Source: Mizuhopecten yessoensis (lineage: Eukaryota). From it: a stretch of DNA of 64,000 nucleotides. The position numbers and the translations under genes are program-made. The stretch covers positions 1,277,603-1,341,602 of the forward strand of contig NW_018480076.1 in NCBI RefSeq assembly GCF_002113885.1. The letters are read 5' to 3'. Below are positions 2,575 through 35,421 of this stretch, one piece after another. The notes under the pieces were generated by a model. It was given only the letters and a program-made list of their open reading frames with translations, ran no database searches and was not told the origin of the DNA. Each line of letters opens with the position of its first letter. Within the stretch, counting starts at the first letter, position 1.

Positions 2575-3500
2575 TAGAATATGATCTTAGCGACAAAACA
2601 TTGTCGGAACAAAACCCTGGCAACAAAACATTGTCAGAACGAGACCCTGGCAACAAAACATTGTCAGAATGAGACCTTGGCAACAAAACATTGTCAAAAC
2701 GAGACCCTGGCAATGAAACATTATCAGAATAAGACCCTGGCAACAAAACATTGTCAGAACCAGACCCTGGCAACAAAACATTGTCAGAATGAGACCTTGG
2801 CAACGAAACATTGTCAGAACGAGACCCTGGCAACGAAACATTGTCAGAATAAGGCCCTGGCAATGAAACATTGTCAGAATGAGACCTTGGCAACAAAACA
2901 TTGTCAGAATAAGACCCTGGCAATGAAACATTGTCAGAACGAGACCCTGGCAACAAAACATTGTCAGAATGAGACCTTGGCAACGAAACATTGTCAGAAT
3001 AAGACCCTGGCAATGAAACATTGTCAGAATGAGACCTTGGCAACGGAACATTGTCAGAACCAGATCCTGGCAATGAAACATTGTCAGAACCAGATCCTGG
3101 CAACAAAACATTGTCAGAACCAGATCCTGGCAACAAAAAATTGTCAGAACCAGATCCTGGCAACAAAACATTGTCAGAACCAGATCCTGGCAGCAAAACA
3201 TGGCTAGAACCAGATCCTGGCAATGAAACATTGTCCGAACCAGATCTTAGCAACAAAACATTGTCAGAACCAGATCCTGGCAACAAAACATTGTCAGAAC
3301 CAGATCTTAGCAACAAAACATTTTCTGAACCAGATCCTGACAATAAAACATTGTCAGAACCAGATCTTAGCAACAAAACATTGTCAGAACCAGATCTTAG
3401 CAACAAAACATTGTCAGAACGAGGTCCTGACAATAAGACATTGTCAGAACCAGATCATGGTAACAAAAACATTGTCAGAACCAGATCATGGTAACAAAAA
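2575..3500. repeat. 30-bp minisatellite, about 31 copies
   Basis: Unit CATTGTCAGAACCAGATCCTGGCAACAAAA with two variant blocks; it accounts for the overlapping ORFs at 2480-3552. Confidence 0.95.
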
Positions 3501-4189: not shown

Positions 4190-5160
4190 ATCTGACTTTT
4201 TACAAGCAAGGCATTACTTTTCTAACATACATTTTACAACAAGACAGAACCTCTCTAATCTAACATTTGACACACAAGGCAAAAGCTGTCTGACCAGACA
4301 TTTGACAAGCAAGACAGAAACTCTATAATCTGATATTTGACATAAAAGGCAAAAGCTGTCTAACCAGACATTTGACAAGAAAATAGAACCTCTCCAATCC
4401 GACATTTGACATATAAGGCAAAGCTGTATAACCGGACATTTGACAAGAAGATAGAACCTCTCCAATCTGACATTTGACATATAAGGCAAAAGGTGTCTAA
4501 CCGGACATTTGACAAATAATACAGAACTTCTCTAATCTGACATTTGACATAAAAGGCAAAAGCTGTCTAACCGGACATTTGACAAGAAAATAGAACCTCT
4601 CCAATCTGACATTTGACATATAAGGCAAAAGCTGTATAACCGGACATTTGACAAGAAGATAGAACCTCTACAATCTGACATTTGACATATAAGGCAAAAG
4701 GTGTCTAACCGGACATTTGACAAGAAGATAGAACCTCTCTAATCTGACATTTGACATAAAAGGCAAAACCTGTCTAACCAGATATTTGACAAGGTAGGAC
4801 CTCTCCAATCTGACATTTGACACACAAGGCAAAAGCTGTCTAACCTTACATTTGACAATCATACAGAACCTCTCTAATCTGACATTCAACACACAAGGCA
4901 AAAACTATCTAACCTTACATTTGACAAACATACAGAACCTCTCTAATCTAACATTTGACACAAGGCAAAAGCTATCTTACCTTTCCTTTGACAAGCAAGA
5001 CAGTACCTCTCTAATCTGACATTTTACAAGCAATGTCGAACCTCTCTTATCTGACATTTTACATACAAGGCAAAAGCTGTCTTACCTTACATTTGATAAG
5101 AAAGATAGAATATTTTAACCAGACAATTGACAAACAAAACAGAACATTTAAAACTGACAA
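4190..5160. repeat. ~69-bp tandem repeat (dimer of ~35-bp subunits), about 14 copies
   Basis: AATCTGA recurs at 4464, 4534, 4603, 4672, 4741 and 4808; GACATTTGACA occurs twice per unit. Confidence 0.9.
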
Positions 5161-6129: not shown

Positions 6130-7140
6130 GACACCTCAAAATAAGTAACACTTGTCAATGTAACACTGTTATTTAAGTAACATCTGTCCAAGGAATATTT
6201 CAATATAGGTAAGATTTTTTTAAGAGACACCTCAATATGAATAAGACTTCTCAAAGAGACACTCCAATATAAGTAATATCTGTCAAAGAGACACATCAAT
6301 ATAAGTAATATCTGTCGAAGAGACACCTCAATATAAGTAACATCTGTCACAGAGACACCTCAATATAAGTAACATCTGTCAAAGAGACACCTCAATAGAA
6401 ATAGCATATGTCAAAGAGACATCTCAATAGAAATAGCATATGTCAAAGAGATATCTCAATAGAAATAGCATATGTCAAAGAGACACCTCAATATAAATAG
6501 CATATGTCAAAGATACACCTCAATATAAATAGCATATGTCAAAGATACACCTCAATATAAATAGCATATGTCAAATAGACACCTCGATATAAATAGCATA
6601 TGTCAAAGAGACACCTCAATATAAATAGCATATGTCAAAGAGACACCTCAATATAAGTAACATCTGTCAGAGACACCTCAATATAAATAACATCTGTCAG
6701 GGAAACACCTAAATTTAAGTAACATCTGTCAAAGAGACACCTCAATATAAGTAACATCTGTCACAGAGACAACTCAATATAAGTAAAATCTGTCAGAGAC
6801 ACCTCAATATAAGTAACATCTGTCAGAGACACCTCAATATAAATAACATCTGTCAGGGAGACACCTAAATTTAAGTAACATCTGTCACGGAGACACCTCA
6901 ATATTAGTAACATTTGTCACGGAGACACCTCAATATAAGTAACATCTGTCAGAGACACCTCAATATAAGTAACAATTTGTCAAGGAGACAACTCAATATA
7001 AGTAACATCTGTCGAAGAGACACCTCAATACAAGTACGATAACATCTGTCAGAGAGGCACCTCAAATTAAGTAACATCTGTCAGGGAGATACCTGAATAT
7101 GAGCAACATCTGTCAAACAAACATCTCAATATAAGTAAAT
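6130..7140. repeat. 32-bp minisatellite, about 31 copies
   Basis: Unit CACCTCAATATAAGTAACATCTGTCAAAGAGA; a variant block containing AAATAGCATATGTC lies at about 6390-6650. Confidence 0.92.
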
Positions 7141-7829
7141 TTGTCTCCGTGACAGTCAATAATATGTTACATTTGTAAATATGTTTTTGTATACAATTTG
7201 ATCATACAGGCAATGAGAGGAAACAATACTGTCTGATTGATAATCAGCTGGTTATGAGTCAATTTGTAACAGCTTGTGACTTTTGACGTATCACAGAAGT
7301 AAAAAGTCATTGAGAAGAATACTATTTTAGCACTAAATCAATTGGATCCCCCAATAATACGAAGCTGACACTTGACAATCACTTTAAACCTGCACTCAGT
7401 CGTAAGTGGTGCATATCATTACATTACTGTATAAAACTGTGGGCGGAGAGATTTTGTATACGATGTCACCAGTGCATTTTATGGTATTTCATACAGGGAT
7501 GTGAATATATTCTCAAGTACACACTGTAATATTAAACATAACATCATAGGTCCAATATAAGAACACCACATAACTCATGGTTAGACCAGTGTATTATTGT
7601 AGCTATGTTCTAGCATGCTCTTTACAGAGCCTTGTACATCACTAAAGACAATACACCCCGGACTGGTCGATTTATAAATATTGAAACCAGTATGATATGA
7701 CTGCCATATAGACTCATCAGAACAGTTGGTCCACAATAACATAGATAATTTAAGTCAAATCTCAATAGGTTTCATGTAAATAAGTGGTTGTTGACATACT
7801 ACACACAGGGACCCGAGAATTTGTTATAT

Positions 7830-12891: not shown

Positions 12892-13627
12892 TTAAGGATG
12901 CTATCTGCATCCAATTCCCCTTTCAGTTTTTAATATCATTGACAAAAGGGTATCCGAAACTCCAAGTGCTATCCGAAAAAGGGTATGCGAAAGCCGGTAC
13001 AGGGAGTATCAGTATCAGAAAAGGTTATCCGAATCGGGTACTAAAATGGGATATCATGATGAGGTGTTATTTTTGGGTATCAAATGAGTTTTCTTATTAA
13101 AATGACTATGTCGAGGGACGCGTGACCATTTACATGCTAATTCTCGGTTTGTTAGGAGGAGTTATCTTTCTTCCCGTGTGACTTTTTTAGTTTAAACATA
13201 TCTCATTGATATATTATATCGATAACCTTTATTCAGCAATAGACACAACTGTCTTTGTACCATAAATACATTGCATATACAAGGATATATGTGGTGGTAC
13301 AATGCATTAAATTACATAAATATATAAATCGGTGACTTTCCATACTTAAATGCAGGTTTCACGACATCAGGGCGGACTTTACTCCTGATTAAATAAGTTA
13401 TTGTTCCGTATCTCATTCGCTTTACAAATGAAAGCAGCAATATTTTTCAATGAACTCTTGCTCGTAGACGATATTAGTTCCAGGAACTTTGGTCTATTTT
13501 GGTGATGACAATACCTTCTCTTGATATACATGTGTATTTATAAGGTACACTCCATAAGGAAATGATACTCGTCCTCTAAAACACCACAAGGGCTACGTGT
13601 AGTACAGTACGATTCTCATAAGGAATA

Positions 13628-13862
13628 GGGTTCGGGTGGTGCAGTGGATAGCGCACTTGCCTTTCACCAAGGCGGCCAGGGTTCGATTCTCCGATCGGAC
13701 GTGACAAGGCTGGGGTCACCTGCCCGACAACGTGGGTTTTCTCCGGGTACTCCGGTTTCCTCCCACACCAAGACCCCTCACGGGCACACAACCGGGCCAA
13801 CAAGAGTGATTAATATAAGTTGAAATAACTTCATAATTGTTGTAAAATAAATAAAGTTTAAA
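13628..13862 (+). mobile_element. tRNA-derived V-domain SINE, copy 2
   Basis: GGGTGGTGCAGTGG...GGTTCGATTC head; GTGGGTTTTCTCCGGGTACTCCGGTTTCCTCCCACA core; AATAAATAAAGTTT tail; no TSD seen. Confidence 0.88.
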
Positions 13863-14429
13863 TTTATATGTAAACATTTGGCAAGTCAACATAGAAGTCA
13901 ACAATATATGAGAATACTTCCGGTGTAGTGATAACATAATCAACTAGACTGCATCCTCGGTCATTCGCGAAAGTTAACGATCTTATACCCGCGTCTTTTC
14001 CTACCCTACCATTCAATATACGTAAACCAGAAGACTTACAGAAATCAATTAACTTCAAACCATTGCTATTAACTATACCCTTATCAAGTGAATACCGCTT
14101 ACCCATACTGTCCTCTACGTATTCGTCATCTATAGGTATAAAGTAACTTATATCACTTTAAACGAAGTCAGATAACTCCTTTGTTCTAGCGTTCATGTCA
14201 CCTGTAATTATAAAATCACAAGTGTCTTCCTCGTCATTAACAATATCAATTAATATGTTATGTAAGCGGTCAATAGTATCAACATCTAAAAAAGCCCGTC
14301 TTCTGGTATTTTCAGGTAAAACATAGCACAAAACGAGATATACATTTCTTTCAAAACCAATGAAAGTTTTTTTTTCCATTTTCAACACAATTATATCGTC
14401 GGCATCTTTAACAACTAATTCAATAGTGG

Positions 14430-17400
14430 TCACTATCATCCTCGTCGTGATCACTCACAGCCTTAGAGAGTATTCTCTACTAATACCATAGCCAGACTAA
14501 TCTCTACTAGTACCATAGCCAGGATTATCTCTACTAATACCATAGCTAGGATAATCTCTACTAATACAATGGCCAGTATACTATCTACTTATACCATAGC
14601 AAAGATACTCTCTACTAATACCATAGCCAGGATAATCTCTACTTATACCATAGCAAGGATACTCTCTAGTAATACCATAGCCAGGATTATCTCTACTAAT
14701 ACCATAGCCACTATCATCCTCGTCGTGATCACTCACAGCCTTAGAGAGTATTCTCTACTAATACCATAACCAGACTAATCTCTACTAGTACCATAGCCAG
14801 GATTATCTCTACTAATACCATAGCCACTATCATCCTCGTCGTGATCACTCACAGCCTTAGAGAGTATTTTCTACTAATACCATAGCCAGACTAATCTCTA
14901 CTAGTACCATAGCCAGGATTATCTCTACTAATTCCATAGCTAGGATAATCTCTACTAATACCATAGCCAGGATAATCTCTACTTATACCATAGCAAGGAT
15001 ACTCTCTAGTAATACCATAGCCAGGATTATCTCTACTAGTACCATAGCCAGGATACTCTCTACTAATACCATAGCCAGGATTATCTCTACTAATACCATA
15101 GCTAGGATAATCTCTACTAATACCATAGCCAGGATAATCTCTACTAATACCATTGCAAGGATACTCTCTAGTAATACCATAGCCAGGATTATCTCTACTA
15201 ATACCATAGCCACTATCATCCTCGTCGTGATCACTCACAGCCTTAGAGAGTATTTTCTACTAATACCATAGCCAGACTAATCTCTACTAGTACCATAGCC
15301 AGGATTATCTCTACTAATACCATAGCCAGGATAATCTCTACTTATACCATAGCAAGGATACTCTCTAGTAATACCATAGCCAGGATAATCTCTACTAATA
15401 CAATGGCCAGTATACTATCTACTTATACCATAGCAAAGATACTCTCTACTAATACCATAGCAAAGATACTCTCTACTAATACCATAGCAAAGATACTCTC
15501 TACTAATACCATAGCAAAGATACTCTCTACTAATACCATAGCCAGGATAATCTCTACTTATACCATAGCAAGGATACTCTCTAGTAATACCATAGCCAGG
15601 ATTATCTCTACTAATACAATGGCAAGTATACTCTCTACTAATACCATAGCCAGGATTATCTCTACTAATACAATGGCAAGTATACTCTCTACTAATACCA
15701 TAGCCAGGATTATCTCTACTAATACCATAGCAAGGATAATCTCTACTAATACCATAGCCAGGATAATCTCTACTTATACCATAGCAAGGATACTCTCTAG
15801 TAATACCATAGCCAGGATAATCTCTACTAGTACCATAGCCAGGATAATCTCTACTAATACCATAGCAAGGATACTCTCTACTAATACCATAGCCAGGATA
15901 CTTTCTACTAATACCATAGCCAGGATAATCTCTGCTAATACCATAGCAAGGATATCTCTACTAATACCATAGCCAGGATTATCTCTACTAATAAAATGGC
16001 CAGTATACTCTCTACTAATACCATAGCCAGGATACTCTCAACTAATACCATAGCCAGGATAATCTCTACTAATACCATAGCTAGGATAATCTCTACTAAT
16101 ACAATGGCCAGTATACTATCTACTTATACCATAGCAAAGATACTCTCTACTAATACCATAGCCAGGATAATCTCTACTTATACCATAGCAAGGATACTCT
16201 CTAGTAATACCATAGCCAGGATAATCTCTACTAGTACCATAATACCATAGCCAGGATAATCTCTACTAATACCATAGCAAGGATAATCTCTACTAATACC
16301 ATAGCTACCATAGCTAGGATAATCTCTACAGCCAGGATAATATCTACTAATACCATATCAAGGATACTCTCTAGTAATACCATAGCCAGGATAATCTCTA
16401 CTAATACCATAGCTAGGATAATCTCTACTAATACCATAGCAAGGATAATCTCTACTAATACCATAGCTAGGATACTCTCTAGTAATACCATAGCCAGGAT
16501 TATCTCTACTAATACCATAGCTAGGATAATCTCTACTAATACCATAGCCAGGATACTCTCTACTAATACCATAGCCAGGATAATCTCTGCTAATACCATA
16601 GCAAAAATACTCTCTACTAATACCATAGCCAGGATACTCTCTGCTAATACAATGGCCAGTATACTCTCTACTAATACCATAGCCAGGATAATCTCTACTT
16701 ATACCATAGCAAGGATACTCTCTAGTAATAGCATAGCCAGGATAATCTCTACTAGTACCATAACCAGGATAATCTCTACTAATACCATAGCTAGGATAAT
16801 CTCTACAAATACCATAGGCAGGATTCTCTCTACTAATACCATAGCTAGGATACTCTCTAGTAATACCATAGCCCGGATAATCTCTATTAGTACCATAGCC
16901 AGGATAATCTCTACTAATACCATAGCCAGGATACTCTCTACTAATACAATGGCCAGTAAACTCTCTACTAATACCATAGCCAGGATAATCTCTACTAATA
17001 CCATAGCAAGGATACTCTCTACTAATACCATAGCCAGGATACTCTCTGCTAATACAATGGCCAGTATACTCTCTACTAATACCATAGCCAGGATTATCTC
17101 TAGTAATACCATAGCCAGGATTATCTCTACTAATACGATAGCTAGGATTATCTCTACTAGTACCATAGCCAGGATTATCTCTACTAATACCATAGCCAGG
17201 ATTATCTCTAGTAATACCATAGCCAGGATTATCTCTACTAATACCATAGCCAGGATAATCTCTACTAGAACCATAGCCAGGAGAATCTCTACTAATACCA
17301 TAGCAAGGATACTCTCTAGTAATACCATAGCCCGGATAATCTCTATTAGTACCATAGCCAGGATAATCTCTACTAATACCATAGCCAGGATACTCTCTAC

Positions 17401-18117
17401 TAATACCATAGCCAGGATACTCTCTGCTAATACAATGGCCAGTATACTCTCTACTAATACCATAGCCAGGATAATCTCTACTAGAACCATAGCCAGGAGA
17501 ATCTCTACTAATACCATAGCAAGGATACTCTCTAGTAATACCATAGCCCGGATAATCTCTACTAGTACCATAGCCAGGAGCATCTCTACTAATACCATAG
17601 CAAGGATACTCTCTAGTAATAGCATAGCCAGGATAATCTCTACTAGTACCATAGCCAGGATTATCTCTACTAATACAATGGCCAGTATACTCTCTGCTAA
17701 TACAATGGCCAGTATGCTCTCTACTAATACCATAGCCAGGATACTCTCTGCTAATACAATGGCCAGTATACTCTCTACTAATACCATAGCCAGGATACTC
17801 TCTACTAATACCATAGCAAGGATACTCTCTACTAATACCATAGCTAGGATAATCTCTACTAATACCATAGCCAGGATTCTCTCTACTAATACCATAGCTA
17901 GGATACTCTCTAGTAATACCATAGCCCGGATAATCTCTACTAGTACCATAGCCAGGATAATCTCTACTAATACCATAGCAAGGATACTCTCTAGTAATAC
18001 CATAGCCAGGATAATCTCTACTAGTACCATAGCCAGGATTATCTCTACTAATACCATAGCTAGGATAATCTCTACTAATACCATAGCCAGGATACTCTCT
18101 ACTAATACCATAGCCAG
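14430..18117. repeat. 27-bp minisatellite, about 135 units, derived from LINE ORF1
   Basis: Unit ATACCATAGCCAGGATAATCTCTACTA, which reads GYGISRDYP on the minus strand; it explains all the long ORFs at 14569-18298. Confidence 0.97.
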
Positions 18118-18499
18118 AGGTTTTCAAAACACCAACTTTGGACATGATCAGTTCTATATCAGAGTTCTATGTCAGTGTAGTCTCGGAAACATGCAATTAG
18201 TGGGCGGGGTTTCGCATGTACACCACGTGTTGGTTTGCCTAACCGGTAGGCCTGTTGTATTCTCTTGTTGTCCCCAATGGCCTGTTTTGTTTCAATAAAA
18301 AAATAACAACACCAGAACATCCATCCTCCACGACCTTGTCATTAGATTCAGTCAAGCGAAAAAACAACCAATTGTTCCTCCTATTTCTGCTTTCAATATC
18401 GATTGACTTGTACTCCACATATGACAACCTATAGTCCATATATGTCCTTGGAGGCCCTATCGACACGTGTACTGACCTTATTCAGGACTCCTTGAATTC

Positions 18500-21400
18500 T
18501 ATCCAATTGACAAAGGGTATAAATAGAAAAACAGAGAATTCATCGAATCTTCCCGACCTACACTAGCGTCACCATTACAGAGTAAGTTTACATCAATAAC
18601 GACATCATACCATGCTAGATCTGTATATAATATTTTACGCAAGTTCTGATATAGAGGACAAAAAAGTAAAAAATGATAAGGATGTTCACAGGGATGCCCA
18701 CATCGACACTCTGCTGAATCTATTAAGTTGGCTATACACATATCATAGTTGAGTGGGCATGCTTGGTTTCTTAGACGACAGTGAAGAATATTTAATTTCC
18801 TAGATCCATAGTTACAAAATTTCTTACTTAAATTACTGTTCACTAACAAGCACTTTTAACATTTGACTTGAACGAATTTAATGAGGGTGAATTTCTGATA
18901 TCGTTATTCAGGTTGTTCCAAAGATTCGTTGCAGAGGGAAAGAAATAATTGTTTGGCGAGTGTAAACAAAACTGTTGTTCTCGCAGCAGGTGAGCTCCTC
19001 GTAAATCATATGGGACTATATTTCCACCATAATCTGGCAACAAGTCAATAAGAAAAGTTGGTGCCATGTTGTTAACAATAGAATAAAATAGAGAAAGTTT
19101 CCGAGCATCTCCCTTTTTGCAAGGGGTAACCAGCCAGTTTCCTGATATAAAAAATCTTTTTCGTGTAAATGGGCAATCCAGTGACGATTCTAGCAGCTTC
19201 TAGTGGAATTTTTCCAGTGTTACGGAGTTAGTTTCACCGCAGTTGCCCCAAACCTCACATGCATATTCAAGAAGTAGTCTAATATAGATTAGAAATAACT
19301 TCTCTAAGTTGTTCCTTTTTAAGATGGGTTTGAGCTTACGAAGAGTTGCATAATATTTTGTTATTTTACTAACTATATGCAATCAACATGAGAGTTCCAT
19401 TTAAAGTCGTTAGAAATAATAACACCTAAGTGTTTATGTTGGTTAGTAATATTGATGGGGGACCACCAAAGTTAAACGATGGAACAAATGGAAGCTGCAG
19501 ATTTGATATGATAAGCCGGGCCTCAGTTTTGATGGGGTTGAAAGACATCATCCACTCTTTGGACCCAACTTCAGATCAGATCTTGCTTCTAATTCTATAA
19601 GGTTCAGGTCACGAGAGGAGTAAGAAAGAGATGTATCGTCCGCGAAAAGTCTGGACAAAGAGAAGAGTTCGCATGAAATATCATTTATATACATTAAGAA
19701 AAATAAAGGCCCGAGAACTGAACCTTGAGGTACACCAGCGTTGGTGGAGGTGAATGAAGAAAGTGCACCTTAAATAAAAACTGCTTGCTTTCTATCAGAA
19801 AGATAGCTACTGATCCAAAGAAGAAGTTGACCTGAAATGCCTTCTCCAATTTGTGTAGAAGACCTTTATGCCACACACGATCAAATGCCACAGAATATTA
19901 GAATAGTGTGCTCAAATCTTTCCAAAGAAGAAATTATTGAGTGATAGAGTTCAATGAGCTGATGAGTGGTAGAATGATTAGGTAAGATTCCTGACTGATA
20001 TTTATAAATATGATCATTTTCAATTAAATAATTATACATGTGTTTATAAACCACACGCTTGAATAGCCTCCCCAAACAGCTTAGCAGTGAAATAGGTCTG
20101 TAGTTTGAAGAAATACTTGCATCATTAGCTTTAAATACAGGCATGACATGAGTAATTTTCCAGCCATCAGGATATTGTGGGCAACACCATCAGGGCCTGT
20201 TGCTTTATTTGTATCAAGTATATTTATAATGTCTTCAATTTCACTAGGTAACACATTTATTTCACATAAAGCAAAATTAGTACGTCTCTCAAAAAAAGGT
20301 AGATCTTTATCAATGTCATTTTCAGATAATGTACATACAGAGCTAAAATAGTTGTTAAATAATTCACATTTACTGGCATTATCATATATAATTTCATTTG
20401 TAGTGGGATCCAGGAGTGGAGATATATCTGAGTGTTTATTACCTTTCAGAATGTTACGTCAAAGTTTCCAGTATGCCTTGGTGCTGTTATTACTTCTGTC
20501 AATGACTGAATCAATGTTTTCATAAAATATTTCTTTAGCTCTCTTTATCATGTCATTTACTTTGTTTCTCATGTGTTTAAATTTTACTTTTGTTGGACTC
20601 TGTATTGTTATTAAACATGATCTTTTTTAGTCCATCTCTTTTTCTAATGCTACTTCTTAAGATTCCATTCATCCATGGCTTGTCACCCTCTCAAACTAAG
20701 ATTTCTTTGTATGGTATACATTTCATGACAGCCTCGACGAATTTATCAGTAAAATATTTACACATTTCATTGACATCTGTTAAGTTATTAAGATCATCAA
20801 TCCAAGGAAGATTGTTAATCATCACTTTTAGTTCGTCAATGTTGCATTGATCATATAACTATATATTTTTTAAATATTTATAGTGATGATTAACTTAAAC
20901 AGGGATATTTATAATAGCAAAAACTGCATCATGGTCACTGATAGAGCGTTCAATTTCAATAACATCAGAAAAAGTTACATTTACAGTATCGCTTACAATA
21001 ATAGGATCAAGAAGTGAAGATGAGTTATCGGTTTGTCTTGTAGGTTCTGTTAATACATCTGTTAACTTATAATAAGAGAGAATAACACGAAGATCGCCTC
21101 TAATAGTTTTGAGAAAGTCTACATTCAAGTCACCTGTGCTTATTAAATTTGGAGTTTCTTCAAATGCAATATCTTCGAATGACGCAGATGGTGCCATAGA
21201 ACAGTATTATTAAGGGAGGGGGGTCTATAAATATTACAAACTAAATAAAGTGAATCTTTAAATTTGATCTGTGACCAAACAGTTTCATCATTTCCGATTT
21301 CCAAGTCAGTTCTTCGCTTAGCAAAGAAAAATTCAGAGATATAATTTGCAACACCCCCGCCAAACATATTTCTACCTTTGCGAAACGGTTCAGAGAAGCC

Positions 21401-23625: not shown

Positions 23626-23698
23626 AACCTCCGGCGGGACTCGAACCCGCAATCCCCGGCTTAGGAGGCCGGTGCCTTATCCATTGGGCCACGGAGGC
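23626..23698 (-). tRNA. trnaR-CCU: tRNA-Arg (anticodon CCT)
   Basis: GCCTCCGTGGCCCAATGGATAAGGCACCGGCCTCCTAAGCCGGGGATTGCGGGTTCGAGTCCCGCCGGAGGTT folds as a full cloverleaf; T6 terminator just downstream. Confidence 0.97.
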
Positions 23699-25046
23699 AC
23701 GTGTTCAAAGTCTTCTGTGAAATCATCTATCGGATATCCTTCTGGTTATTTCACTCCACTTTGGGATACAAGAAACTTCGAGCAACTGATTAGCGAAACC
23801 TCCAATGTTGTCAATGATATTAGTAAACAGGTGAACAATTCCGACACCGAATAAAATCGTCATCGTTTATCATCAAAAATATTAACTTACAATTAGTATC
23901 GTGTAAGGTATAGACAACGAGAGAAACATTACACAAGACTTCTTGCCATTGATGCGCCATATAAATATGTGGACTCTGTAGGGAGGTCAAGTCCAGCATG
24001 CAGTCATACAAATGTAATGTCTTTGTTCACTCCTCAAAGAGACGACAATACATTCATGGATATCGACCTGACAATAAATAGTCCAACCGAATACAAGGTT
24101 ACGTTTGAAGAGGTTATGGAAAATCTGAAGACGTCCCTCTCTATATATTACGAACTTGACAGGAGGATTTTACTGAAAGAGTTGCGATGATATTTGGTAA
24201 ACAGCTTAGAGACTTTATAAAATAATTCAGGATGTGACACAAGTTCGACAAACGCTACAACGGCTGAACCTTCAGCATGTTCTTGCTCTACCTACCCTTA
24301 CAAATATTGTCCAGCTTGAAATGGCTTGCACTTTATTGCTTGCAAGTAATCCCGTCTTATAACACTTTACTATTATTCGATATTTCATAGTAAGTATGTT
24401 TCCCTTTACATTATGTTGTAAAAAGTAGATATAACTTCAGTTGATTTGGCGTTGAAGGCGCTCCGGTTCTTTGTAGAGAAACCATTCGGTGTCCATCATG
24501 TTCAAACCACACTGTATCCGCCTCCTCTCTCTGTATTACGAAAATTACAAGAGGATTTTACTAAAGGAGTTTCTGATGGTATTTGGTAAACAGCTTGGAG
24601 ACTTAATAAAAGTATTGAGGATGTGGCACAAATTCGACAAACGCTACAAGATGTATATGAAGATGAGCTTTGAATAAGAGAGAGAAACATGCTAAATGTA
24701 TTCTGAGATACTCGACTCATCAAGGGATCTTCAAATCATGTAGGTTATTTAATTATAATTATTTATAAATGAGACAATATGGTTTTACGGACATGCAAGT
24801 AATACCGACTATTAAAACTAAAGTATTATTATATATTTCGCGCTTACAACCGGGACAACAAGAGTGATAAGTAGAAGTTGATACCTTGTTTCAATATTGT
24901 TGTGAAAGAAATAAAGTTTACATTAAAAAAAAAACAAGTTTTTCTATCCTTCGTATTGCAAAACTGAATTTGTTCCAATTGAATTGGTGTTGAATGTCTG
25001 TATAGACGTTCTCCGCCTCTGCTTATAACACCACCAGAAAAATAAT

Positions 25047-25119
25047 AACCTCCGGCGGGACTCGAACCCGCAATCCCCGGCTTAGGAGGCCGGTGCCTTA
25101 CCCATTGGGCCACGGAGGC
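25047..25119 (-). tRNA. trnaR-CCU: tRNA-Arg (CCT), A20G variant
   Basis: One D-loop substitution at 25101. Confidence 0.9.
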
Positions 25120-25953
25120 ACATGGTCGGTGTTTTCTGTGAAATATACTCCTCTTTGGTAAGGTTATTAAGAAACTTTAAGCCACTTCATCAGTTCATTG
25201 CAAAGTTTCCCGTGTTGTCAATGGTATGGAGTATGATATATATGGTATGGGATATGCTGGTAAACTGAATGGCAATTACAACACGGAATGAAATAATCAT
25301 TGGGTGACTACCGTGTTTGAACCACACTGTATTCTCTTTCCGTCCCAGCATTCCGAACATTTCCACAGGATTCTATCAAAGAGTTCCGATGTGGTGAGAT
25401 TTGGTAACAAGCTTGGAGACTTCTTACTATTGGTGCGTCATATGGATGTGGGGCTCTGTAGGAAGATCAAGACCAGCATGCAGTCATACAAATGTGATGT
25501 CTTTGTTCACTCCTCAAAGAGACGACAATACATTCATGGATATCGACATTACAATAGTCAATCCAAATAAAATGTTACGTTTGAAGACGTTCCTCTCTCT
25601 ATATTACGAACATGACAGGAGGATTTTACTGAAAGAGTTCCGATGATATTTTCTAAACAGCTTAGAGACTTAATAAAATAATTGAGGATGTGACACAAGT
25701 TCACAACGGCTGAACCTTCAGCATGTTCTTGCTCTACCCACCCTTACAAATATTGTCCAGCTTGAAATGGCTTGCACTTTATTGACTTGAAAGTAATCCC
25801 GTCTAATAACACTTTACTATTATTCGATATTTCATAGTAAGTATGTTTCCCTTTACATTATGTTGTAAAAAGTAGCTATAACTTCAGTTGATTTGGCGTT
25901 GAAGGCGCTCTGGTTCTTCGCCTCCGCTAACAAATCCATGACAAAAATATAAT

Positions 25954-26026
25954 AACATCCGGCGGGACTCGAACCCGCAATGCCCGGCTTAGGAGGCCGG
26001 TGCCTTATCCATTGGGCCACGGAGCC
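25954..26026 (-). pseudogene. tRNA-Arg (CCT), probable pseudogene
   Basis: Three substitutions, two of which break acceptor-stem pairs 2-71 and 3-70. Confidence 0.75.
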
Positions 26027-27007
26027 ACGTGTTCAACGTCTTCTGTGAAATCATCTATCGGATATCCTTCTGGTTATTTCACTCCACTTTGGGATACAAG
26101 AAACTTCGAGCAACTGAATAGCGAAACGTCCAATGTTGTCAATGATATTAGTAAACAGGTGAACAATCCGACACCGAATAAAATCGTCATCGTTTATCAT
26201 CAAAAATATTAACTTACAATTAGTATCGTGTAAGGTATAGACAACGAGAGAAACATTACACAAGACTTCTTGCCATTGATGCGCCATATAAATATGTGGA
26301 CTCTGTAGGAAGGTCAAGTCCAGCATGTCTTTGTTCACTCCTCAAAGAGACGACAATACATTCATTGATATCGACCTTACAACAAATAGTCCAACCGAAT
26401 ACAAGGTTACATTTGGAGAGGTTATGGTAAATCTAGAGAAACCATTCGGTGTCCATCATGTTCAAACCACACTGTATCCGCCTCCTCTCTCTGTATAACG
26501 AACATTACAAGAGGATTTTACTAAAGGAGTTTCTGATGATATTTGGTAAACAGCTTGGAGACTTAATAAAAGTATTGAGGATGTGGCACAAATTCGACAA
26601 ACGCTACAAGATGTATATGAACATGAGCTTTGAATAAGAGAGAGAAACATGCTAAATGTATTCTGAGATACTCGACTCATCAAGGGATCCTCAAATCATG
26701 TAGGTTATTTAATTATAATTATTTATAAATGAGACAATATGGTTTTACGGACATGCAAGTAATACCGAATATTGAAACTAAAGTATTATTATATATTTCA
26801 CGCTTACAACCGGGACAACCAGTGTGATAAGTAGAAGTTGATACCTTGTTTCAATATTGTTGTGAAAAAAATATAGTTTACATTAAAAAAAACACTACGT
26901 TTTTCTATCCTTCGTATTGCAAAACTGAATTAGTTCCAATTGAATTGGTGTTGAATGTCTGTATAGACGTTCTTCACGTCTGCTTATAACACCACCAGAA
27001 AAATAAT

Positions 27008-27080
27008 AACCTCCGGCGGGACTCGAACCCGCAATCCCCGTCTTAGGAGGCCGGTGCCTTATCCATTGGGCCACGGAGGC
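27008..27080 (-). tRNA. trnaR-CCU: tRNA-Arg (CCT), anticodon-stem mismatch variant
   Basis: One substitution at 27041 giving a G30-A40 mismatch. Confidence 0.85.
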
Positions 27081-28121
27081 ACATGGTCGGTGTTTTCTGG
27101 GAAATATACTCCTCTTTGGTAAGGTTATTAAGAAACTTTAAGCCACTTCATCAGTTCATTGCAAAGTTTCCCGTGTTGTCTATGGTATGGAGTATGGTAT
27201 ATATGGTATGGTATATGCTAGTAAACAGAATGGCAATTACAACACGGAATGAAATAATCATTGGGTGACTCCCGTGTTTGAACCACACTGTATTCTCTTT
27301 CCGTCCCAGTATTCCGAACAATTCCACAGGATTCTATCCAAGAGTTCCGATGTGGTGAGATTTGGTAACAAGCTTGGAGACTTCTTACTATTGGTGCGTC
27401 ATATGGATGTGGGGCTCTGTAGGAAGATCAAGTCCAGCATGTCTTTGTTCACTCCTCAAAGAGACGACAATACATTCATGGATATCGACCTTACAATAAA
27501 TAGTCCAACCGAATACAAGGTTACGTTTGAAGAGGTTATGGAAAATCTAGAGAAACCATTCGGTGTCCATCATGTTCAAACCACACTGTATCCGCCTCCT
27601 CTCTCTGTATAACGAACATTACAAGAGGATTTTACTAAAGGAGTTTCTGATGATATTTGGTAAACAGCTTGGAGACTTAATAAAAGTATTGAGGATGTGG
27701 CACAAATTCGACAAACGCTACAAGATGTATATGAACATGAGCTTTGAATAAGAGAGAGAAACATGCTAAATGTATTCTGAGATACTCGACTCATCAAGGG
27801 ATCCTCAAATCATGTAGAATATTTAATTATAATTATTTATAAATGAGACAATATGGTTTTACGGACATGCAAGTAATACCGAATATTGAAACTAAAGTAT
27901 TATTATATAATTCACGCTTACAACCGGGACAACCAGTGTGATAAGTAGAAGTTGATACCTTGTTTCAATATTGTTGTGAAAAAAATAAAGTTTACATTAA
28001 AAAAAACACTACGTTTTTCTATCCTTCGTATTGCAAAACTGAATTAGTTCCAATTGAATTGGTGTTGAATGTCTGTATAGACGTTCTTCACGTCTGCTTA
28101 TAACACCACCAGAAAAATAAT

Positions 28122-28194
28122 AACCTCCGGCGGGACTCGAACCCGCAATCCCCGGCTTAGGAGGCCGGTGCCTTATCCATTGGGCCACGGAGGC
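28122..28194 (-). tRNA. trnaR-CCU: tRNA-Arg (CCT)
   Basis: Identical to the consensus; T5 terminator. Confidence 0.97.
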
Positions 28195-29038
28195 ACATGG
28201 TCGGTGTTTTCTGGGAAATATACTCCTCTTTGGTAAGGTTATTAAGAAACTTTAAGCCACTTCATCAGTTCATTGCAAAGTTTCCCGTGTTGTCTATGGT
28301 ATGGAGTATGATATATATGGTATGGTATATGCTGGTAAACAGAATGGCAATTACAACACGGAATGAAATAATCATTGGGTGACTACCGTGTTTGAACCAC
28401 ACTGTATTCTCTTTCCGTCCCAGTATTCCGAACATTTCCACAGGATTCTATCAAAGAGTTCCGATGTGGTGAGATTTGGTAACAAGCTTGGAGACTTCTT
28501 ACTATTGGTGCGTCATATGGATGTGGGGCTCTGTAGGAAGATCAAGACCAGCATGCAGTCATACAAATGTGATGTCTTTGTTCACTCCTCAAAGAGACGA
28601 CAATACATTCATGGATATCGACATTACAATAGTCAATCCAAATATAATGTTACGTTTGAAGACGTTCCTCTCTCTATATTACGAACATGACAAGAGGATT
28701 TTACTGAAACAGTTCCGATGATATTTTCTAAACAGCTTAGAGACTTAATAAAATAATTGAGGATGTGACACAAGTTCGACAAACGCTACAACGACTGAAC
28801 CTTCAGCATGTTCTTGCTCTACCTTCCCTTACAAATATTTTCCAGCAGGAAATGACTTGCACTTTATTGACTTGCAAGTAATCCCGTCTAATAACACTTT
28901 ACTATTATTCGATATTTCATAGTAAGTATGTTTCCCTTTACATTATGTTGTAAAAATTAGATATAACTTCAGTTGATTTGGCGTTGAAGGCGCTCTGGTT
29001 CTTCGCCTCCGCTAACAAATCCAGGACAGAAATATAAT

Positions 29039-29111
29039 AACCTCCGGCGGGACTCGAACCCGCAATCCCCGGCTTAGGAGGCCGGTGCCTTATCCATTGG
29101 GCCACGGAGGC
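29039..29111 (-). tRNA. trnaR-CCU: tRNA-Arg (CCT)
   Basis: Identical to the consensus. Confidence 0.97.
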
Positions 29112-29929
29112 ACATGGTCGATGTTTCCTGAGAAATATACTACTCTTTGGTAAGGTTATTAAGAAACTTTAAGCCACTTCATCAGTTTATTGCAAAGTTT
29201 CCCGTGTTGTCAATGGTATGGAGTATGATATATATGGTATGGAATATGCTGGTAAACAGAATGGCAATTACAACACGGAATGAAATAAGCATTGGGTGAC
29301 TACCGTGTTTGAACCACACTGTATTCTCTTTCCGTCCCAGTATTCCGAACATTTCCACAGGATTCTATCAAAGAGTTCCGATGTGGTGAGATTTGGTAAC
29401 AAGCTTGGAGACTTCTTACTATTGGTGCGTCATATGGATGTGGGGCTCTGTAGGGAGATCAAGACCAGCATGCAGTCATACAAATATGATGTCTTTGTTC
29501 ACTCCTCAAAGAGACGACAATACATTCATGGATATCGACATTACAATAGTCAATCCAAATATAATGTTACGTTTGAAGACGTTCCTCTCTCTATATTACG
29601 AACATGACAGGAGGATTTTACTGAAAGAGTTCCGATGATATTTCTAAACAGCTTAGAGACTTAATAAAATAATTGAGTATGTTACACAAGTTCGACAAAC
29701 GCTACAACGGCTGAACCTTCAGCATGTTCTTGCTCTACCTACCCTTACAAATATTGTCCAGCTTGAAATGGCTTGCACTTTATTGACTTGAAAGTAATCC
29801 CGTCTAATAACACTTTACTATTATTCGATATTTCATGGTAAGTATGTTTCCCTTTACATTATGTTGTAAAAAGTAGATATAACTTCAGTTGATTCGCCTC
29901 CGCTAACAAATCCATGACAAAAATATAAT

Positions 29930-30002
29930 AACCTCCGGCGGGACTCGAACCCGCAATCCCCGGCTTAGGAGGCCGGTGCCTTATCCATTGGGCCACGGAG
30001 CC
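29930..30002 (-). tRNA. trnaR-CCU: tRNA-Arg (CCT), C2G variant
   Basis: One acceptor-stem mismatch, shared with the 25954 copy. Confidence 0.85.
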
Positions 30003-31003
30003 ACGTGTTCAACGTCTTCTGTGAAATCATCTATCGGATATCCTTCTGGTTATTACTCTCCACTTTGGGATACAAGAAACTTCGAGCAACTGAATAGCGA
30101 AACGTCCAATGTTGTCAATGATATTAGTAAACAGGTGAACAATCCGACACCGAATAAAATCGTCATCGTTTATCATCAAAAATATTAACTTACAATTAGT
30201 ATCGTGTAAGGTATAGACAACGACAGAAACATTACACAAGACTTCTTGCCATTGATGCGCCATATGAATATGTGGACTCTGTAGGAAGGTCAAGTCCAGC
30301 ATGCAGTCATACAAATGTAATTCCTTGGTTCACTCCTCAAAGAGACGACAATACATTCATGGATATCGACCTTACAATAAATAGTCCAACCGAATACAAG
30401 GTTACGTTTGAAGAGGTTATGGAAAATCTAGAGAAACCATTCGGTGTCCATCATGATCAAACCACACTGTATCCGCCTCCTCTCTCTGTATTACGAACAT
30501 TACAAGAGGATTTTAATAAAGGAGGTTCTGATGGTATTTGGTAAACAGCTTGGAGACTTAATAAAAGTATTGAGGATGTGGCACAAACTCGACAAACGCT
30601 ACAAAATGTATATGAAGATGAGCTTTGAATAAGAGAGAGAGAAACATGCTAAATGTATTCTGAGATACTCGACTCATCAAGGGATCCTCAAATCATGTAG
30701 GTTATTTAATTATAATTATTTATAAATAAGACAATATGTTTTACGGACATGCAAGTAATACCGACTATTGAAACTAAAGTATTATTATATATTTCACGCT
30801 TACAACCGGGACAACAAGAGTGATAAGTAGAAGTTGATACCTTGTTTCAATATTGTTGTGAAAGAAATAAAGTTTACATTAATAAAAACACAAAGTTTTT
30901 CTATCCTTCGTATTGCAAAACTGAATTAGTTCCAATTGAATTGGTGTTGAATGTCTGTATAGACGTTCTCCGCGTCTGCTTATAAAACCACCAGAAAAAT
31001 AAT

Positions 31004-31076
31004 AACCTCCGGCGGGACTCGAACCCGCAATCCCCGGCTTAGGAGGCCGGTGCCTTATCCATTGGGCCACGGAGGC
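31004..31076 (-). tRNA. trnaR-CCU: tRNA-Arg (CCT)
   Basis: Identical to the consensus; T5 terminator. Confidence 0.97.
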
Positions 31077-32192
31077 ACATGGTCGGTATTTTTTGGGAAA
31101 TATACTTCTCTTTGGTAAGGTTATTAAGAAACTTTAAGCCACTTCATCAGTTCATTGCAAAGTTTCCCGTGTTGTCAATGGTATGGAGTATGATATATAT
31201 GGTATGGTATATGCTGGTAAACAGAATGGCAATTACAACACGGAATGAAATAATCATTGGGTGACTACCGTGTTTGAACCACACTGTATTTTCTTTCCGT
31301 CCCAGTATTCCGAACATTTCCACAGGATTCTATCAAAGAGTTCCGATGTGGTGAGATTTGGTCAACAAGATTGGAGACTTCATAAAAGTATTAAGGATTT
31401 GGCACAAATTCGACAAACGCTACAAGACTTCTCACCATTGGTGCGTCATATAGATGTGAAGCTCTGTAGGAAGATCAAGACCAGCATGCAGTCATACAAA
31501 TGTGATGTCTTTGTTCACTCCTCAAAGAGACAACAATACATTCATGGATATCGACCTTACAATAGTCCATTCAAATATAATGTTACGTTTAAAGACGTTC
31601 CTCTTTCTATATTACGAACATGACAGGAGGGTTTTACTAAAATAGTTCCGATGAGATTTGATAAACAACTTAGAGACTTAATAAAATAATTGAGGATGTG
31701 GCACAAGTTCGACAAACGCTACAAGAGCTGAATGAAGATGAGCTTTGAATAACTCCTTTTTCGGCATGTATTGCTCTACAACCCCAGACAGCTATTGTCC
31801 AGCTTGACATATAGAAACTGGCGACCTAAATATCACCTATAATGCATAGCTACGAGAGCCTATTTTAAAGCATTTATCTTACGATTTAAGTGTTATTGTC
31901 GAGAGTGCAACTCTTCTGTAATGGTTCTGAAAGAAATGCCCAGATGAGCGGTTGTTGCCAAACACAGGATAATGTAAAATGGTGAATTTCCGTGATATTG
32001 GTCAAGTCCACTGTTTATTTTGTAGCATTAAATGTGAAGTTCGTGGTCTTTAAGCAATACCTGTAAGCAATACCGCCAGTTAACACTTTATTAGTACTGT
32101 GTATTTCATAGCGAGTATGTTTCTCTTTACATTGTATTGTGAAAAAAAAAAATGTTATTCGCGTCAACTTTCAAAGCCGCAATGGAAAATTA

Positions 32193-32258
32193 AACCTCCT
32201 GCGGGACTCGAATCCCCGGCTTAGGAGGCCGGTGCCTTATCCATTGGGCCACGGAAGC
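32193..32258 (-). pseudogene. tRNA-Arg (CCT) pseudogene
   Basis: 7-nt deletion removing the 5' side of the T stem, plus acceptor-stem changes. Confidence 0.9.
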
Positions 32259-32837
32259 TCATGTTCAAAGCATTTTGGGATAATCTACTTACTTAAGTTC
32301 CTGTTATATGCTCTACTCTCAACTTTTCGGAAGGATAAAAGAAACTTTGAACCATTGAATTGTAAAACCAGCAATGTTGTCTGTGACATTTAGTAATATT
32401 GGTAAGCCGAAGGATAATTACGACACCAAATGAATGGTCATGACTCGGCAGAAACAATCAAACTTTTCTTCTTTCCTGACTATTTTATTCCGTCTATGGC
32501 AATCCGTATTTAGAGAAAATTCAGCACCCAACCAATAATATTACATAAGTTGAAGTAGTCAACGAGTGGAATTTGACGGAAGACTTCTTGCCAATGCTGC
32601 GCCATACCATATGGATGTGTGGACTGGGAAGGAAGGTCAAGTACAGCATGCAGTCATACTAAATTAATGTGTTTGTTCATTCCTCCCAACGCAGCCAATG
32701 TACATAGACATTACAATAGACCAAATGTCTAGGGAAACCATTCGGTGTCCATCATGTTCAAACCACGCTCTAATTCCTCTCTCTGTATTACGAATATTAC
32801 AAGAGGATTTTACTAAAGGAGTTCCTGAAGATATTTG

Positions 32838-33932: not shown

Positions 33933-34341
33933 ATTTGGAATCTATCTTGAGTCCTCATAAAAGTATTGAAGATGTAGCAAACATTCGGCAAAGGCTACAA
34001 TAACTTCCGGTATAGGAACTGTCGATCTGAATGTGAAGCTTCTATTGTTATGGAAAGTGCAAAACTTTTTGAACGTTTAGGAAATGTTAAGCCTGTTGGG
34101 CAGGTGTTGCGAAACGCAAGCTAATATAATATTATGGATTTTCGTGATATTGGACCAGTCCACTGTTTATTTTGAGGTAAAGTTGTGAAGTCTGGGGTCG
34201 TATATATCTGCATATAATACCTACTATGAAAACTTTATCATTATTATATATTACGTTGTAAATATATAAATTCTATTGTGAAACAAAAATAAATCAAATG
34301 TAAAATTGGTGATCCGCTTCCGCCCAACACAAAAATATGAT

Positions 34342-34414
34342 AACCTCCGGCGGGACTCGAACCCGCAATCCCCGGCTTAGGAGGCCGGTGCCTTATCCAT
34401 TGGGCCACGGAGGC
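34342..34414 (-). tRNA. trnaR-CCU: tRNA-Arg (CCT)
   Basis: Identical to the consensus; T5 terminator. Confidence 0.97.
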
Positions 34415-35348: not shown

Positions 35349-35421
35349 AACCTCCGGCGGGACTCGAACCCGCAATCCCCGGCTTAGGAGGCCGGTGCCT
35401 TATCCATTGGGCCACGGAGGC
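35349..35421 (-). tRNA. trnaR-CCU: tRNA-Arg (CCT)
   Basis: Identical to the consensus. Confidence 0.97.

What the first reader, a model, noticed from the sequence alone, without database searches (positions are those of the whole stretch)
14430..18300. Birth of a 3.7-kb minisatellite from nine codons of LINE ORF1, leaving a 595-aa (GYGISRDYP)n Gly/Tyr-rich ORF
Seen: upstream of the array the minus strand reads IQQAYRLGKPTRGVHAKPRPLIACFRDYTDIEL, then a 13-bp duplication, then IMSKVGVLKTS-GYGISREYP, so the first repeat unit is the in-frame continuation of ORF1. Known: I.RAHR.G...PRPII..F followed by L.G....I..D.P is the RRM/CTD signature of L1-type (Transposase_22-like) ORF1 proteins. Inference: the seed of this satellite is identifiable, and the native ORF1 Met now opens a Tyr/Gly/Arg repeat protein compositionally like mollusc shell-matrix and adhesive proteins, which makes it raw material for a de novo gene. 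Caveat: other frames are also open, so ORF length is not evidence of selection.
Basis: partly seen in the sequence, partly recalled or inferred. Interest (0 to 1): 0.72.

Follow-up and report, generated by a model that had tools for sequence, protein, structure and literature searches.

The report
Minisatellite born from LINE ORF1 codons
A 27-base piece of a dead jumping gene's first protein-coding frame multiplied in place into about 130 tandem copies; the origin is unusually easy to trace, but the long open reading frame it leaves shows no sign of being a gene.

Summary
Window 14467-18115 (minus strand) is a 27-bp minisatellite of about 130 units. It continues, in frame, the ORF1 of a decayed non-LTR retrotransposon.

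The claimed origin is supported:
- Four paralogous copies in the same genome have both flanks about 0.6 kb apart, no tandem repeat, and exactly one 27-bp unit (GYGISRDYP).
- That unit encodes the best-conserved motif of the ORF1 C-terminal domain. None of 120 database homologues has it more than once.
- A dimer of the unit occurs nowhere else in the 988-Mb assembly.
- ORF1 has no Pfam hit, but its predicted structure matches the human LINE-1 ORF1p trimer.

The host copy is dead: 5'-truncated, frameshifted, internally deleted, and without a reverse transcriptase.

The proto-gene idea has no support:
- Unit variants fit the neutral synonymous:non-synonymous:stop ratio.
- An antisense frame has a longer open stretch (627 codons) than the GYG frame (585).
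- Other minisatellites in this genome carry open frames of 675 to 2473 aa.
- The ATG is an internal ORF1 codon, and nothing resembling a signal peptide follows it.

Earlier notes of this scan report other minisatellites born from coding or splice-junction DNA elsewhere in this genome, but none from a LINE ORF1. This is a clean new example of a known process.

The parts
18116..18515 (-). 5'-truncated, frameshifted fragment of LINE ORF1: end of the coiled coil, the RRM and the start of the CTD. It ends with ...IMSKVGVLKTS just before the first unit.
   Evidence: Homology to the full-length paralogue L030 starts at 18515. The alignment to four paralogues shows a 26-bp deletion, a 1-bp deletion and a 13-bp insertion.
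18158..18170 (-). 13-bp insertion, an imperfect tandem duplication, that shifts the frame and brings a TGA stop just upstream of the ORF's ATG.
   Evidence: Absent from C3487, C2160 and C3729 in alignment A1. The sequence is shown.
14467..18115 (-). 27-bp minisatellite: 129 full units (49 variants) plus irregular pieces. The seed unit is GGCTATGGTATTAGTAGAGATTATCCT, encoding GYGISRDYP.
   Evidence: TRF. Segmentation and variants. A dimer of the unit is found 72 times in the genome, all inside this array.
16358..18145 (-). 595-aa ORF (Y 18%, G 17%, S 11%, R 11%, P 10%) that starts at an internal Met codon of ORF1. It is a by-product of a stop-free unit.
15212..15246 (-). Internal copy 1 of the 35-bp distal junction (ORF1 tail, KAVSDHD..EDDS), embedded in the array.
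   Evidence: Also seen as extra matches of the flank query.
14826..14860 (-). Internal copy 2 of the 35-bp distal junction.
14710..14744 (-). Internal copy 3 of the 35-bp distal junction.
14425..14466 (-). Remnant of the ORF1 acidic tail (true distal flank). About 171 bp of ORF1 between the seed and this point are missing, as are 27 bp inside the tail.
   Evidence: Comparison with the paralogue sequence.
13869..14424 (-). ORF2 apurinic-type endonuclease fragment (contains GDMNAR), about 95% identical to paralogues. About 400 bp (ORF1 end and ORF2 start) are deleted at its 5' edge, at an ATTG microhomology.
   Evidence: Pfam Exo_endo_phos hits the intact paralogue ORF2.
13630..13860 (+). tRNA-derived SINE sitting where about 2.4 kb of ORF2, including the reverse transcriptase, is missing.
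   Evidence: tRNA-like head found by ARAGORN at 13630-13701. Sequence.
13539..13635 (-). Remnant of the 3' end of ORF2 (82% identical to the paralogue).

Best explanation
An old, 5'-truncated copy of an APE-type non-LTR retrotransposon lies on the minus strand. Its ORF1 is an L1-like coiled-coil/RRM/CTD protein. Inside this dead copy, one 27-bp stretch of ORF1 was duplicated in place and then grew to about 130 tandem units. That stretch consists of the nine codons GYGISRDYP, the most conserved motif of the C-terminal domain.

Shown:
- The seed is single-copy in paralogues and in all homologues examined.
- The array exists at this locus only.
- The copy is dead.
- The array contains three extra copies of its own distal junction and recurring multi-unit blocks, while adjacent units are almost never identical.

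Inferred:
- The first duplication arose by slippage or unequal exchange at very short direct repeats. Only CTG, or an imperfect TYCTG, flanks the seed.
- Later growth came from out-of-register recombination or repair of multi-unit blocks, some of which spanned the array/flank boundary.
- The 595-aa ORF is a passive consequence of a unit whose length is a multiple of three and which has no stop in three of six frames. It is non-functional DNA in a minisatellite-prone genome.
For: Array.

One unit in the paralogues, followed by the rest of ORF1 and then ORF2 endonuclease. Flanks lie 581-655 bp apart in the paralogues against 3.65 kb here.

The motif G[IV][SN]RDYPxEI..AR is invariant or nearly so in 36 aligned ORF1 homologues. 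It is present once in 109 of 120 homologues, absent in 11, and never repeated.

A dimer of the unit (up to 3 mismatches) occurs 72 times in the assembly, all in this array, with 0 for the control pattern.

Dead copy: homology to a full-length paralogue covers only 18515-18088, 14424-13869 and 13635-13539.

Divergence: flanks differ from paralogues by 4.2-8.3% substitutions, and units differ from the seed by a mean of about 2.1 in 27, or 7.9%. The array is therefore about as old as the copy.

Growth mode: three internal junction copies; recurring blocks; only 1.6% of adjacent units identical.

Neutrality: synonymous:non-synonymous:stop among distinct mutations is 7:26:2, against 17:59:5 possible. 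First codon positions are the most variable.

Longest open stretches are 585 codons (GYG frame), 627 (antisense frame) and 472 (third open frame).

Other minisatellites in this genome give open frames of 675 to 2473 aa. The window itself holds at least five other minisatellites.
Against: No read-level evidence was available, so the array length and the internal junction copies rest on one assembly.

The microhomology at the seed edges is only 3 bp, which is weak support for the slippage model.

Single-stranded DNA folding gives no hairpin that would favour slippage (z +3.05 and +2.66).

Transcription was not tested, so a transcribed or translated product is not excluded.

The upstream flank is more diverged (7.5-8.3%) than the downstream flank (about 4.2%). 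This is unexplained.
Confidence: 0.88

Rival explanations
1. Proto-gene: the array is transcribed from the minus strand, and the 595-aa Gly/Tyr/Arg-rich ORF is translated and on its way to becoming, or already is, a structural protein (shell-matrix or adhesive-like).
For: An ATG-initiated 595-aa ORF exists. Its composition is Y 18%, G 17%, P 10% and it is hydrophilic. Precedents exist for repeat expansion creating new repetitive proteins (my own knowledge: the notothenioid antifreeze glycoprotein arose from a 9-nt trypsinogen element).
Against: Unit variation shows no excess of synonymous changes. An antisense frame is open for longer. The distal half of the array has in-frame stops and frame breaks. 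The element is 5'-truncated, so no LINE promoter is present. The N-terminus MSKVGVLKTSGYG does not look like a signal peptide (by inspection). There is no homologous repeat protein among 5.8 billion clusters; the single hit is a low-complexity match to a platypus channel-like protein. Long ORFs are common in this genome's minisatellites.
Confidence: 0.03
2. The array was not born here. A source element of this LINE family already carried an expanded ORF1 repeat, and this copy inherited it by retrotransposition.
For: Coding tandem repeats inside ORF1 are known in other LINEs (my own knowledge: the length-polymorphism region of mouse L1 ORF1). The copy is older than the near-identical paralogues that served as comparison.
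Against: No other locus in 988 Mb holds even a dimer of the unit. None of 120 ORF1 homologues repeats the motif. The array includes copies of the junction with a deletion-bearing ORF1 tail, which is a locus-specific lesion. A 130-unit insertion at the first strand of the predicted C-terminal domain (residues 244-247 in the model) would probably disable ORF1p; that last step is inference.
Confidence: 0.04
3. Assembly artefact: the repeat is real, but its length and inner structure (3.65 kb, internal junction copies) are products of short-read assembly.
For: The assembly is fragmented (82,659 contigs). Arrays of 27-bp units with about 87% pairwise identity between units are hard to assemble. No reads could be laid on the region.
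Against: There is no N in the whole window. The 49 unit variants form a non-periodic, information-rich order, which assemblers can resolve and which is not what a collapsed or looped graph usually gives. Several comparable arrays elsewhere in the assembly are similarly long.
Confidence: 0.1

Closest known systems
TE-derived minisatellites that expand from a single-copy motif between short direct repeats (Haber & Louis 1998 model, as reviewed in PMC6947457; examples from Alu, B1, MaLR and Gmr9/Ogre elements)
   Same: A short internal piece of a transposable element is duplicated in place and then amplified by slippage, unequal exchange or conversion. The array sits inside a decayed element, and the flanks still show the parent element.
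   Different: The seed here is protein-coding ORF1 sequence of a LINE, not a SINE, LTR or UTR region. The flanking direct repeat is only 3 bp, or an imperfect 5 bp, where the model invokes 5-10 bp. The array also amplified copies of its own distal junction.
Human/mammalian LINE-1 ORF1p (coiled coil + RRM + CTD; PDB 2yko, 2ykp, 2ldy; Pfam Transposase_22)
   Same: The parent ORF1 has the same predicted domain order and fold: Foldseek E 1.8e-9, probability 1.00, about 210 aligned columns, from a model with block-mean pLDDT above 85 over most of residues 90-300. The seed is predicted to form the first strand of the CTD and the turn before its long helix.
   Different: Only 18-21% identity. There is no Pfam hit at E <= 0.1 and no PDB hit by sequence. 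The homologues found carry no Pfam ORF1 domain. The LINE clade was not determined. Among solved structures, the RT is closest to L1 ORF2p (E 6e-34).
Other minisatellites born from functional sequence in this same genome, as reported in this scan's earlier notes (splice-junction 'mirages'; a dead receptor gene's 72-bp coding repeat with about 130 copies)
   Same: Same genome, same size class, an identifiable functional seed, and arrays of tens to more than 100 units. I confirmed that the genome and this window are rich in minisatellites.
   Different: Those seeds are host exon edges or a host coding repeat. Here the seed is a transposon ORF with no pre-existing repeat. I did not test the earlier notes.
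New repetitive proteins made by expansion of a short coding element (notothenioid antifreeze glycoprotein from trypsinogen; my own knowledge)
   Same: A 9-codon coding seed amplified in frame gives a long periodic ORF.
   Different: Here there is no evidence of expression, secretion signal or selection, and the tests that could be run point to neutrality.

Membership tests
Minisatellite (tandem repeat, unit 10-100 bp) | Head-to-tail copies of a 10-100 bp unit in one array | tested here: met
   Period 27, 133.8 copies, 84% matches. 129 full units by segmentation.
TE-derived minisatellite expanded in situ | The unit is present once, at the homologous position, in other copies of the parent element | tested here: met
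   One unit in C3487, C2160 and C3729, with no tandem repeat there. One motif in 109 of 120 ORF1 homologues and none with two.
TE-derived minisatellite expanded in situ | The array is confined to one insertion, not spread with the element | tested here: met
   All 72 dimer matches in 988 Mb lie in this array.
TE-derived minisatellite expanded in situ | Short direct repeats (5-10 bp) flank the seed, as in the Haber & Louis model | tested here: inconclusive
   In the paralogue, only CTG (imperfect TTCTG / TCCTG) lies 27 bp apart at the seed edges (sequence). The model is described in PMC6947457.
L1-type (type II) ORF1p / Pfam Transposase_22 | Sequence match to the Pfam model | tested here: not met
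   No Pfam family at E <= 0.1 for the intact paralogue ORF1. No PDB match by sequence.
L1-type (type II) ORF1p / Pfam Transposase_22 | Coiled coil + RRM + CTD architecture and fold | tested here: met
   AF2 model: helix 108-156, a beta-alpha-beta RRM-like domain, then a CTD. The top 11 Foldseek hits are all human L1 ORF1p, E down to 1.8e-9.
L1-type (type II) ORF1p / Pfam Transposase_22 | Trimerisation and RNA binding / chaperone activity | not testable with these tools
   Needs biochemistry.
APE-type non-LTR retrotransposon (LINE) | ORF2 with an apurinic-type endonuclease and a reverse transcriptase | tested here: met
   The paralogue ORF2 (1115 aa) hits Exo_endo_phos, Exo_endo_phos_2 and RVT_1, the last at E 5e-36. 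The window copy keeps only part of the endonuclease.
De novo / proto protein-coding gene | Purifying selection on the reading frame | tested here: not met
   Synonymous:non-synonymous:stop is 7:26:2 against 17:59:5 possible. The antisense open stretch (627) is longer than the sense one (585).
De novo / proto protein-coding gene | Transcription and translation of the ORF | not tested
Secreted shell-matrix / adhesive protein | N-terminal signal peptide | tested here: not met
   The N-terminus is MSKVGVLKTSGYGISREYP..., with no hydrophobic core. This is by inspection only; no predictor was run.

The most novel reading that the evidence does not exclude
The minus strand of the array is transcribed, for example by read-through from the LINE 3' end just upstream or from a nearby promoter. 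The Gly/Tyr/Arg-rich 595-aa ORF is then translated. That would make this a caught-in-the-act case of a transposon ORF1 motif turning into a periodic structural or condensate-forming protein in a scallop.
Probability: 0.03. Interest if true: 0.65.

Novelty: new member of a known kind. Interest (0 to 1): 0.3.

Why it matters
The seed of a minisatellite can rarely be named to the base. Here the unexpanded state survives in sister copies of the same element, so both the start point (27 bp, nine conserved codons of ORF1) and the later growth mode (multi-unit blocks that include the array's own edge) can be read directly.

The case adds a LINE coding-sequence example to the known list of TE-derived minisatellites. 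It also fits a genome that, on this and earlier evidence, makes minisatellites from many kinds of sequence.

It is a useful caution for gene finders as well. A 595-aa ATG-initiated ORF with an attractive composition arises here with no selection at all.

Tried and rejected

2. Pfam on ORF1 and on the repeat ORF gave no hit. phmmer of ORF1 against PDB gave only noise. The fold search was needed to place ORF1.

3. Higher-order repeat. Lag analysis over 1-39 units shows no periodic peak, so there is no strict higher-order structure, only recurring blocks.

4. Hairpin-driven slippage. Five units folded as single-stranded DNA on either strand are less stable than all 200 shuffles. Rejected.

5. A second array of the same origin elsewhere. 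The protein-level search of the own genome gave many hits. The three best non-self loci that I fetched are unrelated 27-bp minisatellites with different units. Their similarity comes from period and composition, not homology.

6. Homologues of the repeat protein. The one hit, a platypus channel-like protein at 46% identity over 28% of the query, I read as low-complexity noise.

7. LINE clade assignment. Not achieved. Only solved-structure neighbours were compared.

8. A polarity gradient of unit divergence along the array. None was seen.
Full report
OBSERVATION

Tandem Repeats Finder reports one array at window 14474-18117 with period 27, 133.8 copies, 84% matches and score 4933. My own segmentation on the minus strand, from 18115 down to 14467, gives 129 full 27-bp units of 49 distinct kinds. 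The exact seed-type unit GGCTATGGTATTAGTAGAGATTATCCT (GYGISRDYP) occurs eight times.

The ORF at 16358-18145(-) is 595 aa and reads MSKVGVLKTS followed by GYGISRDYP-like nonamers. There is no N in the window.

Upstream on the minus strand, the frames read ...YKSIDIESRNRRNNWLFFRLTESNDKVVEDGCSGVV... and, after a frameshift...IQQAYRLGKPTRGVHAKPRPLIACFRDYTDIEL followed by a stop.

ORIGIN OF THE UNIT

I searched the window's own 988-Mb assembly with both flanks. Four other contigs (C3487, C2160, C3729, C5553) carry both flanks in the same order and orientation, but only 581-655 bp apart. Tandem Repeats Finder finds no comparable array in them.

In C3487 the sequence runs ...IELIMSKVGVLKNS GYGISRDYP EEIQRARKSLLDDLRKAKRAGKEARIVFPAKLIVNNIVV.... 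C2160 reads the same. So there is exactly one 27-bp unit, followed by the rest of ORF1, a short spacer and ORF2. Alignment A1 shows the window sequence to be collinear with these copies up to and into the first unit.

A dimer of the unit, allowing up to three mismatches, occurs 72 times in the assembly. Every occurrence is inside this array, and the reversed control pattern occurs 0 times. The segment is native, single-copy ORF1 sequence.

I did not build a family consensus. The comparison is copy by copy.

THE PARENT ELEMENT

The C2160 paralogue has an ORF2 of 1115 aa with Exo_endo_phos, Exo_endo_phos_2 and RVT_1 (E 5e-36). This makes it an APE-type non-LTR retrotransposon. Among solved structures its RT is nearest to human L1 ORF2p (E 6e-34), ahead of R2. 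The clade was not determined.

ORF1 (363 aa in C3487) has no Pfam hit at E <= 0.1 and no sequence match in the PDB. It does have 136 homologues at 32-50% identity in the large protein collection. None of these carries a Pfam ORF1 domain. A few are labelled as symbiont MAG proteins, which I take to be host contamination.

In an alignment of 36 of these homologues, the best conserved stretch of the C-terminal half is LKGT..G[IV][SN]RDYPxEI..AR. D, P, E and I are invariant, and R and Y nearly so.

An AlphaFold2 model built on that alignment is confident over about residues 85-300, with block-mean pLDDT above 85 for most of residues 90-300. It shows a long helix (108-156), an RRM-like beta-alpha-beta domain, and a C-terminal domain whose first strand (244-247) and following turn are the seed residues. 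Foldseek against the PDB returns human LINE-1 ORF1p as its top 11 hits: 2yko at E 1.8e-9, probability 1.00, about 210 aligned columns, plus 2ldy (RRM-CTD) and 2w7a (RRM).

Membership of Pfam Transposase_22 by sequence is not met.

Among 120 homologues the motif occurs once in 109, not at all in 11, and never twice.

STATE OF THE WINDOW'S COPY

Homology to the full-length paralogue covers only three stretches:
- 18515-18088, part of ORF1;
- 14424-13869, part of the endonuclease;
- 13635-13539, the 3' end of ORF2.

The copy starts inside ORF1, at about residue 103. Directly upstream lies the 3' end of another non-LTR element.

The ORF1 fragment has a 26-bp deletion, a 1-bp deletion and the 13-bp insertion at 18158-18170, which brings in a TGA.

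After the array, about 171 bp of ORF1 are missing, as are 27 bp of the acidic tail. About 400 bp spanning the ORF1 end and the ORF2 start are missing too, and that last deletion lies at an ATTG microhomology.

About 2.4 kb of ORF2, including the RT, is absent. A tRNA-derived SINE sits at that point.

The ATG of the 595-aa ORF is Met 232 of ORF1, not its start codon.

Substitution divergence from the paralogues is 4.2-4.3% downstream and 7.5-8.3% upstream. Three of the paralogues differ from one another by only 0.2-2.4%. Units differ from the seed by about 2.1 in 27, or 7.9%, with no gradient along the array. The array is therefore roughly as old as the insertion.

HOW THE ARRAY GREW

Adjacent units are identical in only 1.6% of cases, and no lag between 1 and 39 units stands out. 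However, multi-unit blocks recur.

The 35-bp distal junction, which is the start of the deletion-bearing ORF1 tail, occurs three more times inside the array, at 15212-15246, 14826-14860 and 14710-14744. Each copy is followed again by units (also visible). The array therefore grew at least partly by out-of-register duplication of blocks, some of which spanned the array/flank boundary. That pattern points to unequal exchange or repair rather than one-unit slippage. This last step is inference.

The first duplication is not observable. The seed is bounded in the paralogue only by CTG, or imperfect TTCTG / TCCTG, 27 bp apart. This is weaker than the 5-10 bp repeats invoked in the Haber & Louis model as reviewed in PMC6947457.

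Single-stranded folding gives no hairpin; both strands fold worse than all shuffles.

IS THE ORF MORE THAN A BY-PRODUCT?

The unit has no stop in three of six frames. The longest open stretches in the array are 585 codons (GYG frame), 627 (one antisense frame) and 472 (second sense frame).

The distinct mutations seen among units are 7 synonymous, 26 non-synonymous and 2 stop. Among all possible single changes of the seed the numbers are 17, 59 and 5, which are the same proportions. First codon positions vary most.

The distal half of the array carries in-frame stops, a 26-bp unit and the junction inserts.

The protein is Y 18%, G 17%, S 11%, R 11% and P 10%, with pI 7.9. Its N-terminus does not look like a signal peptide (by inspection).

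A search of 5.8 billion protein clusters finds only one low-complexity hit.

A six-frame search of the own genome with 180 aa of the repeat returns many other loci. The three best that I fetched are unrelated 27-bp minisatellites of 88, 132 and 48 copies. Among the hit loci, open frames of 675 to 2473 aa are listed.

The window itself holds at least five further minisatellites with periods of 22-69 bp.

Long ORFs are thus a routine property of this genome's minisatellites, and nothing singles this one out. I did not try again or go around it.

CONTEXT FROM THE SCAN

Earlier notes on this genome call it the Yesso scallop. This agrees with my memory of the assembly's size and contig count, but I did not verify it. 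The notes report many minisatellites seeded from exon-intron junctions, and one from a dead receptor gene's coding repeat. None concerns a LINE ORF1. I treat these notes as leads. What I confirmed myself is only that minisatellites are frequent.

VERDICT

The observation and the claimed origin are correct and now documented against sister copies. The process, a TE-internal motif turning into a minisatellite, is known (PMC6947457). The LINE-ORF1 coding seed and the junction-bearing growth pattern are pleasing details, not a new category. The de novo gene reading is unsupported by every test that could be run and remains only a small possibility pending RNA and peptide data.

Noticed in passing
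window 2593-3499, 4192-5096, 6130-7145, 38535-41056, 47443-48628, 61845-62135: The 64-kb window holds at least five further minisatellites (units of 30, 35/69, 32, 32 and 22 bp; up to 79 copies) and a short array with 64/128-bp units. The one at 2593-3499 also gives overlapping ORFs on both strands. This region and genome look prone to minisatellites.
   Followed up: partly
window 23626-36385 (-): Eleven tRNA-Arg(CCT) genes lie in tandem on the minus strand, spaced about 0.9-3.3 kb apart.
   Followed up: no
window 13630-13860 (+): A tRNA-derived SINE with a tRNA-like head (ARAGORN, odd anticodon loop) sits exactly where the LINE copy lacks about 2.4 kb of ORF2.
   Followed up: partly
window 18520-19400 (-): The 3' end of a different non-LTR retrotransposon (RT C-terminal region and a C..C....H....C-type motif ending in ...HFLLFCPLYQNLR) abuts the truncated ORF1 fragment in the same orientation.
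   Followed up: no
L047 2136-4519 (G000:C5572), L048 1504-5043 (G000:C76747), L049 1789-3075 (G000:C104): Three unrelated minisatellites also have a 27-bp period (88, 132 and 48 copies). One is 95% homogeneous and has a 675-aa open frame. Other loci in the hit list show open frames of up to 2473 aa.
   Followed up: partly
L030 (G000:C2160:231500-241000), L029 (G000:C3487), L006 (G000:C5553): Sister copies of the LINE family differ by only 0.2-2.4% in the compared stretches. One has an uninterrupted 1115-aa ORF2, so the family was probably active recently, whereas the window copy is 4-8% diverged.
   Followed up: partly
window 18116-18515 vs 13869-14424: The flank upstream of the array is about twice as diverged from the paralogues (7.5-8.3%) as the downstream flank (4.2-4.3%). 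The numbers are small and the difference is unexplained.
   Followed up: no
window 18115-18125 (-): Just before the first unit the window reads ...AAAACCTCTGG, where the paralogues read ...AAAAATTCTGG. The change makes the left flank look more like a unit end (..CCT). This could be chance or a trace of conversion from the array.
   Followed up: no
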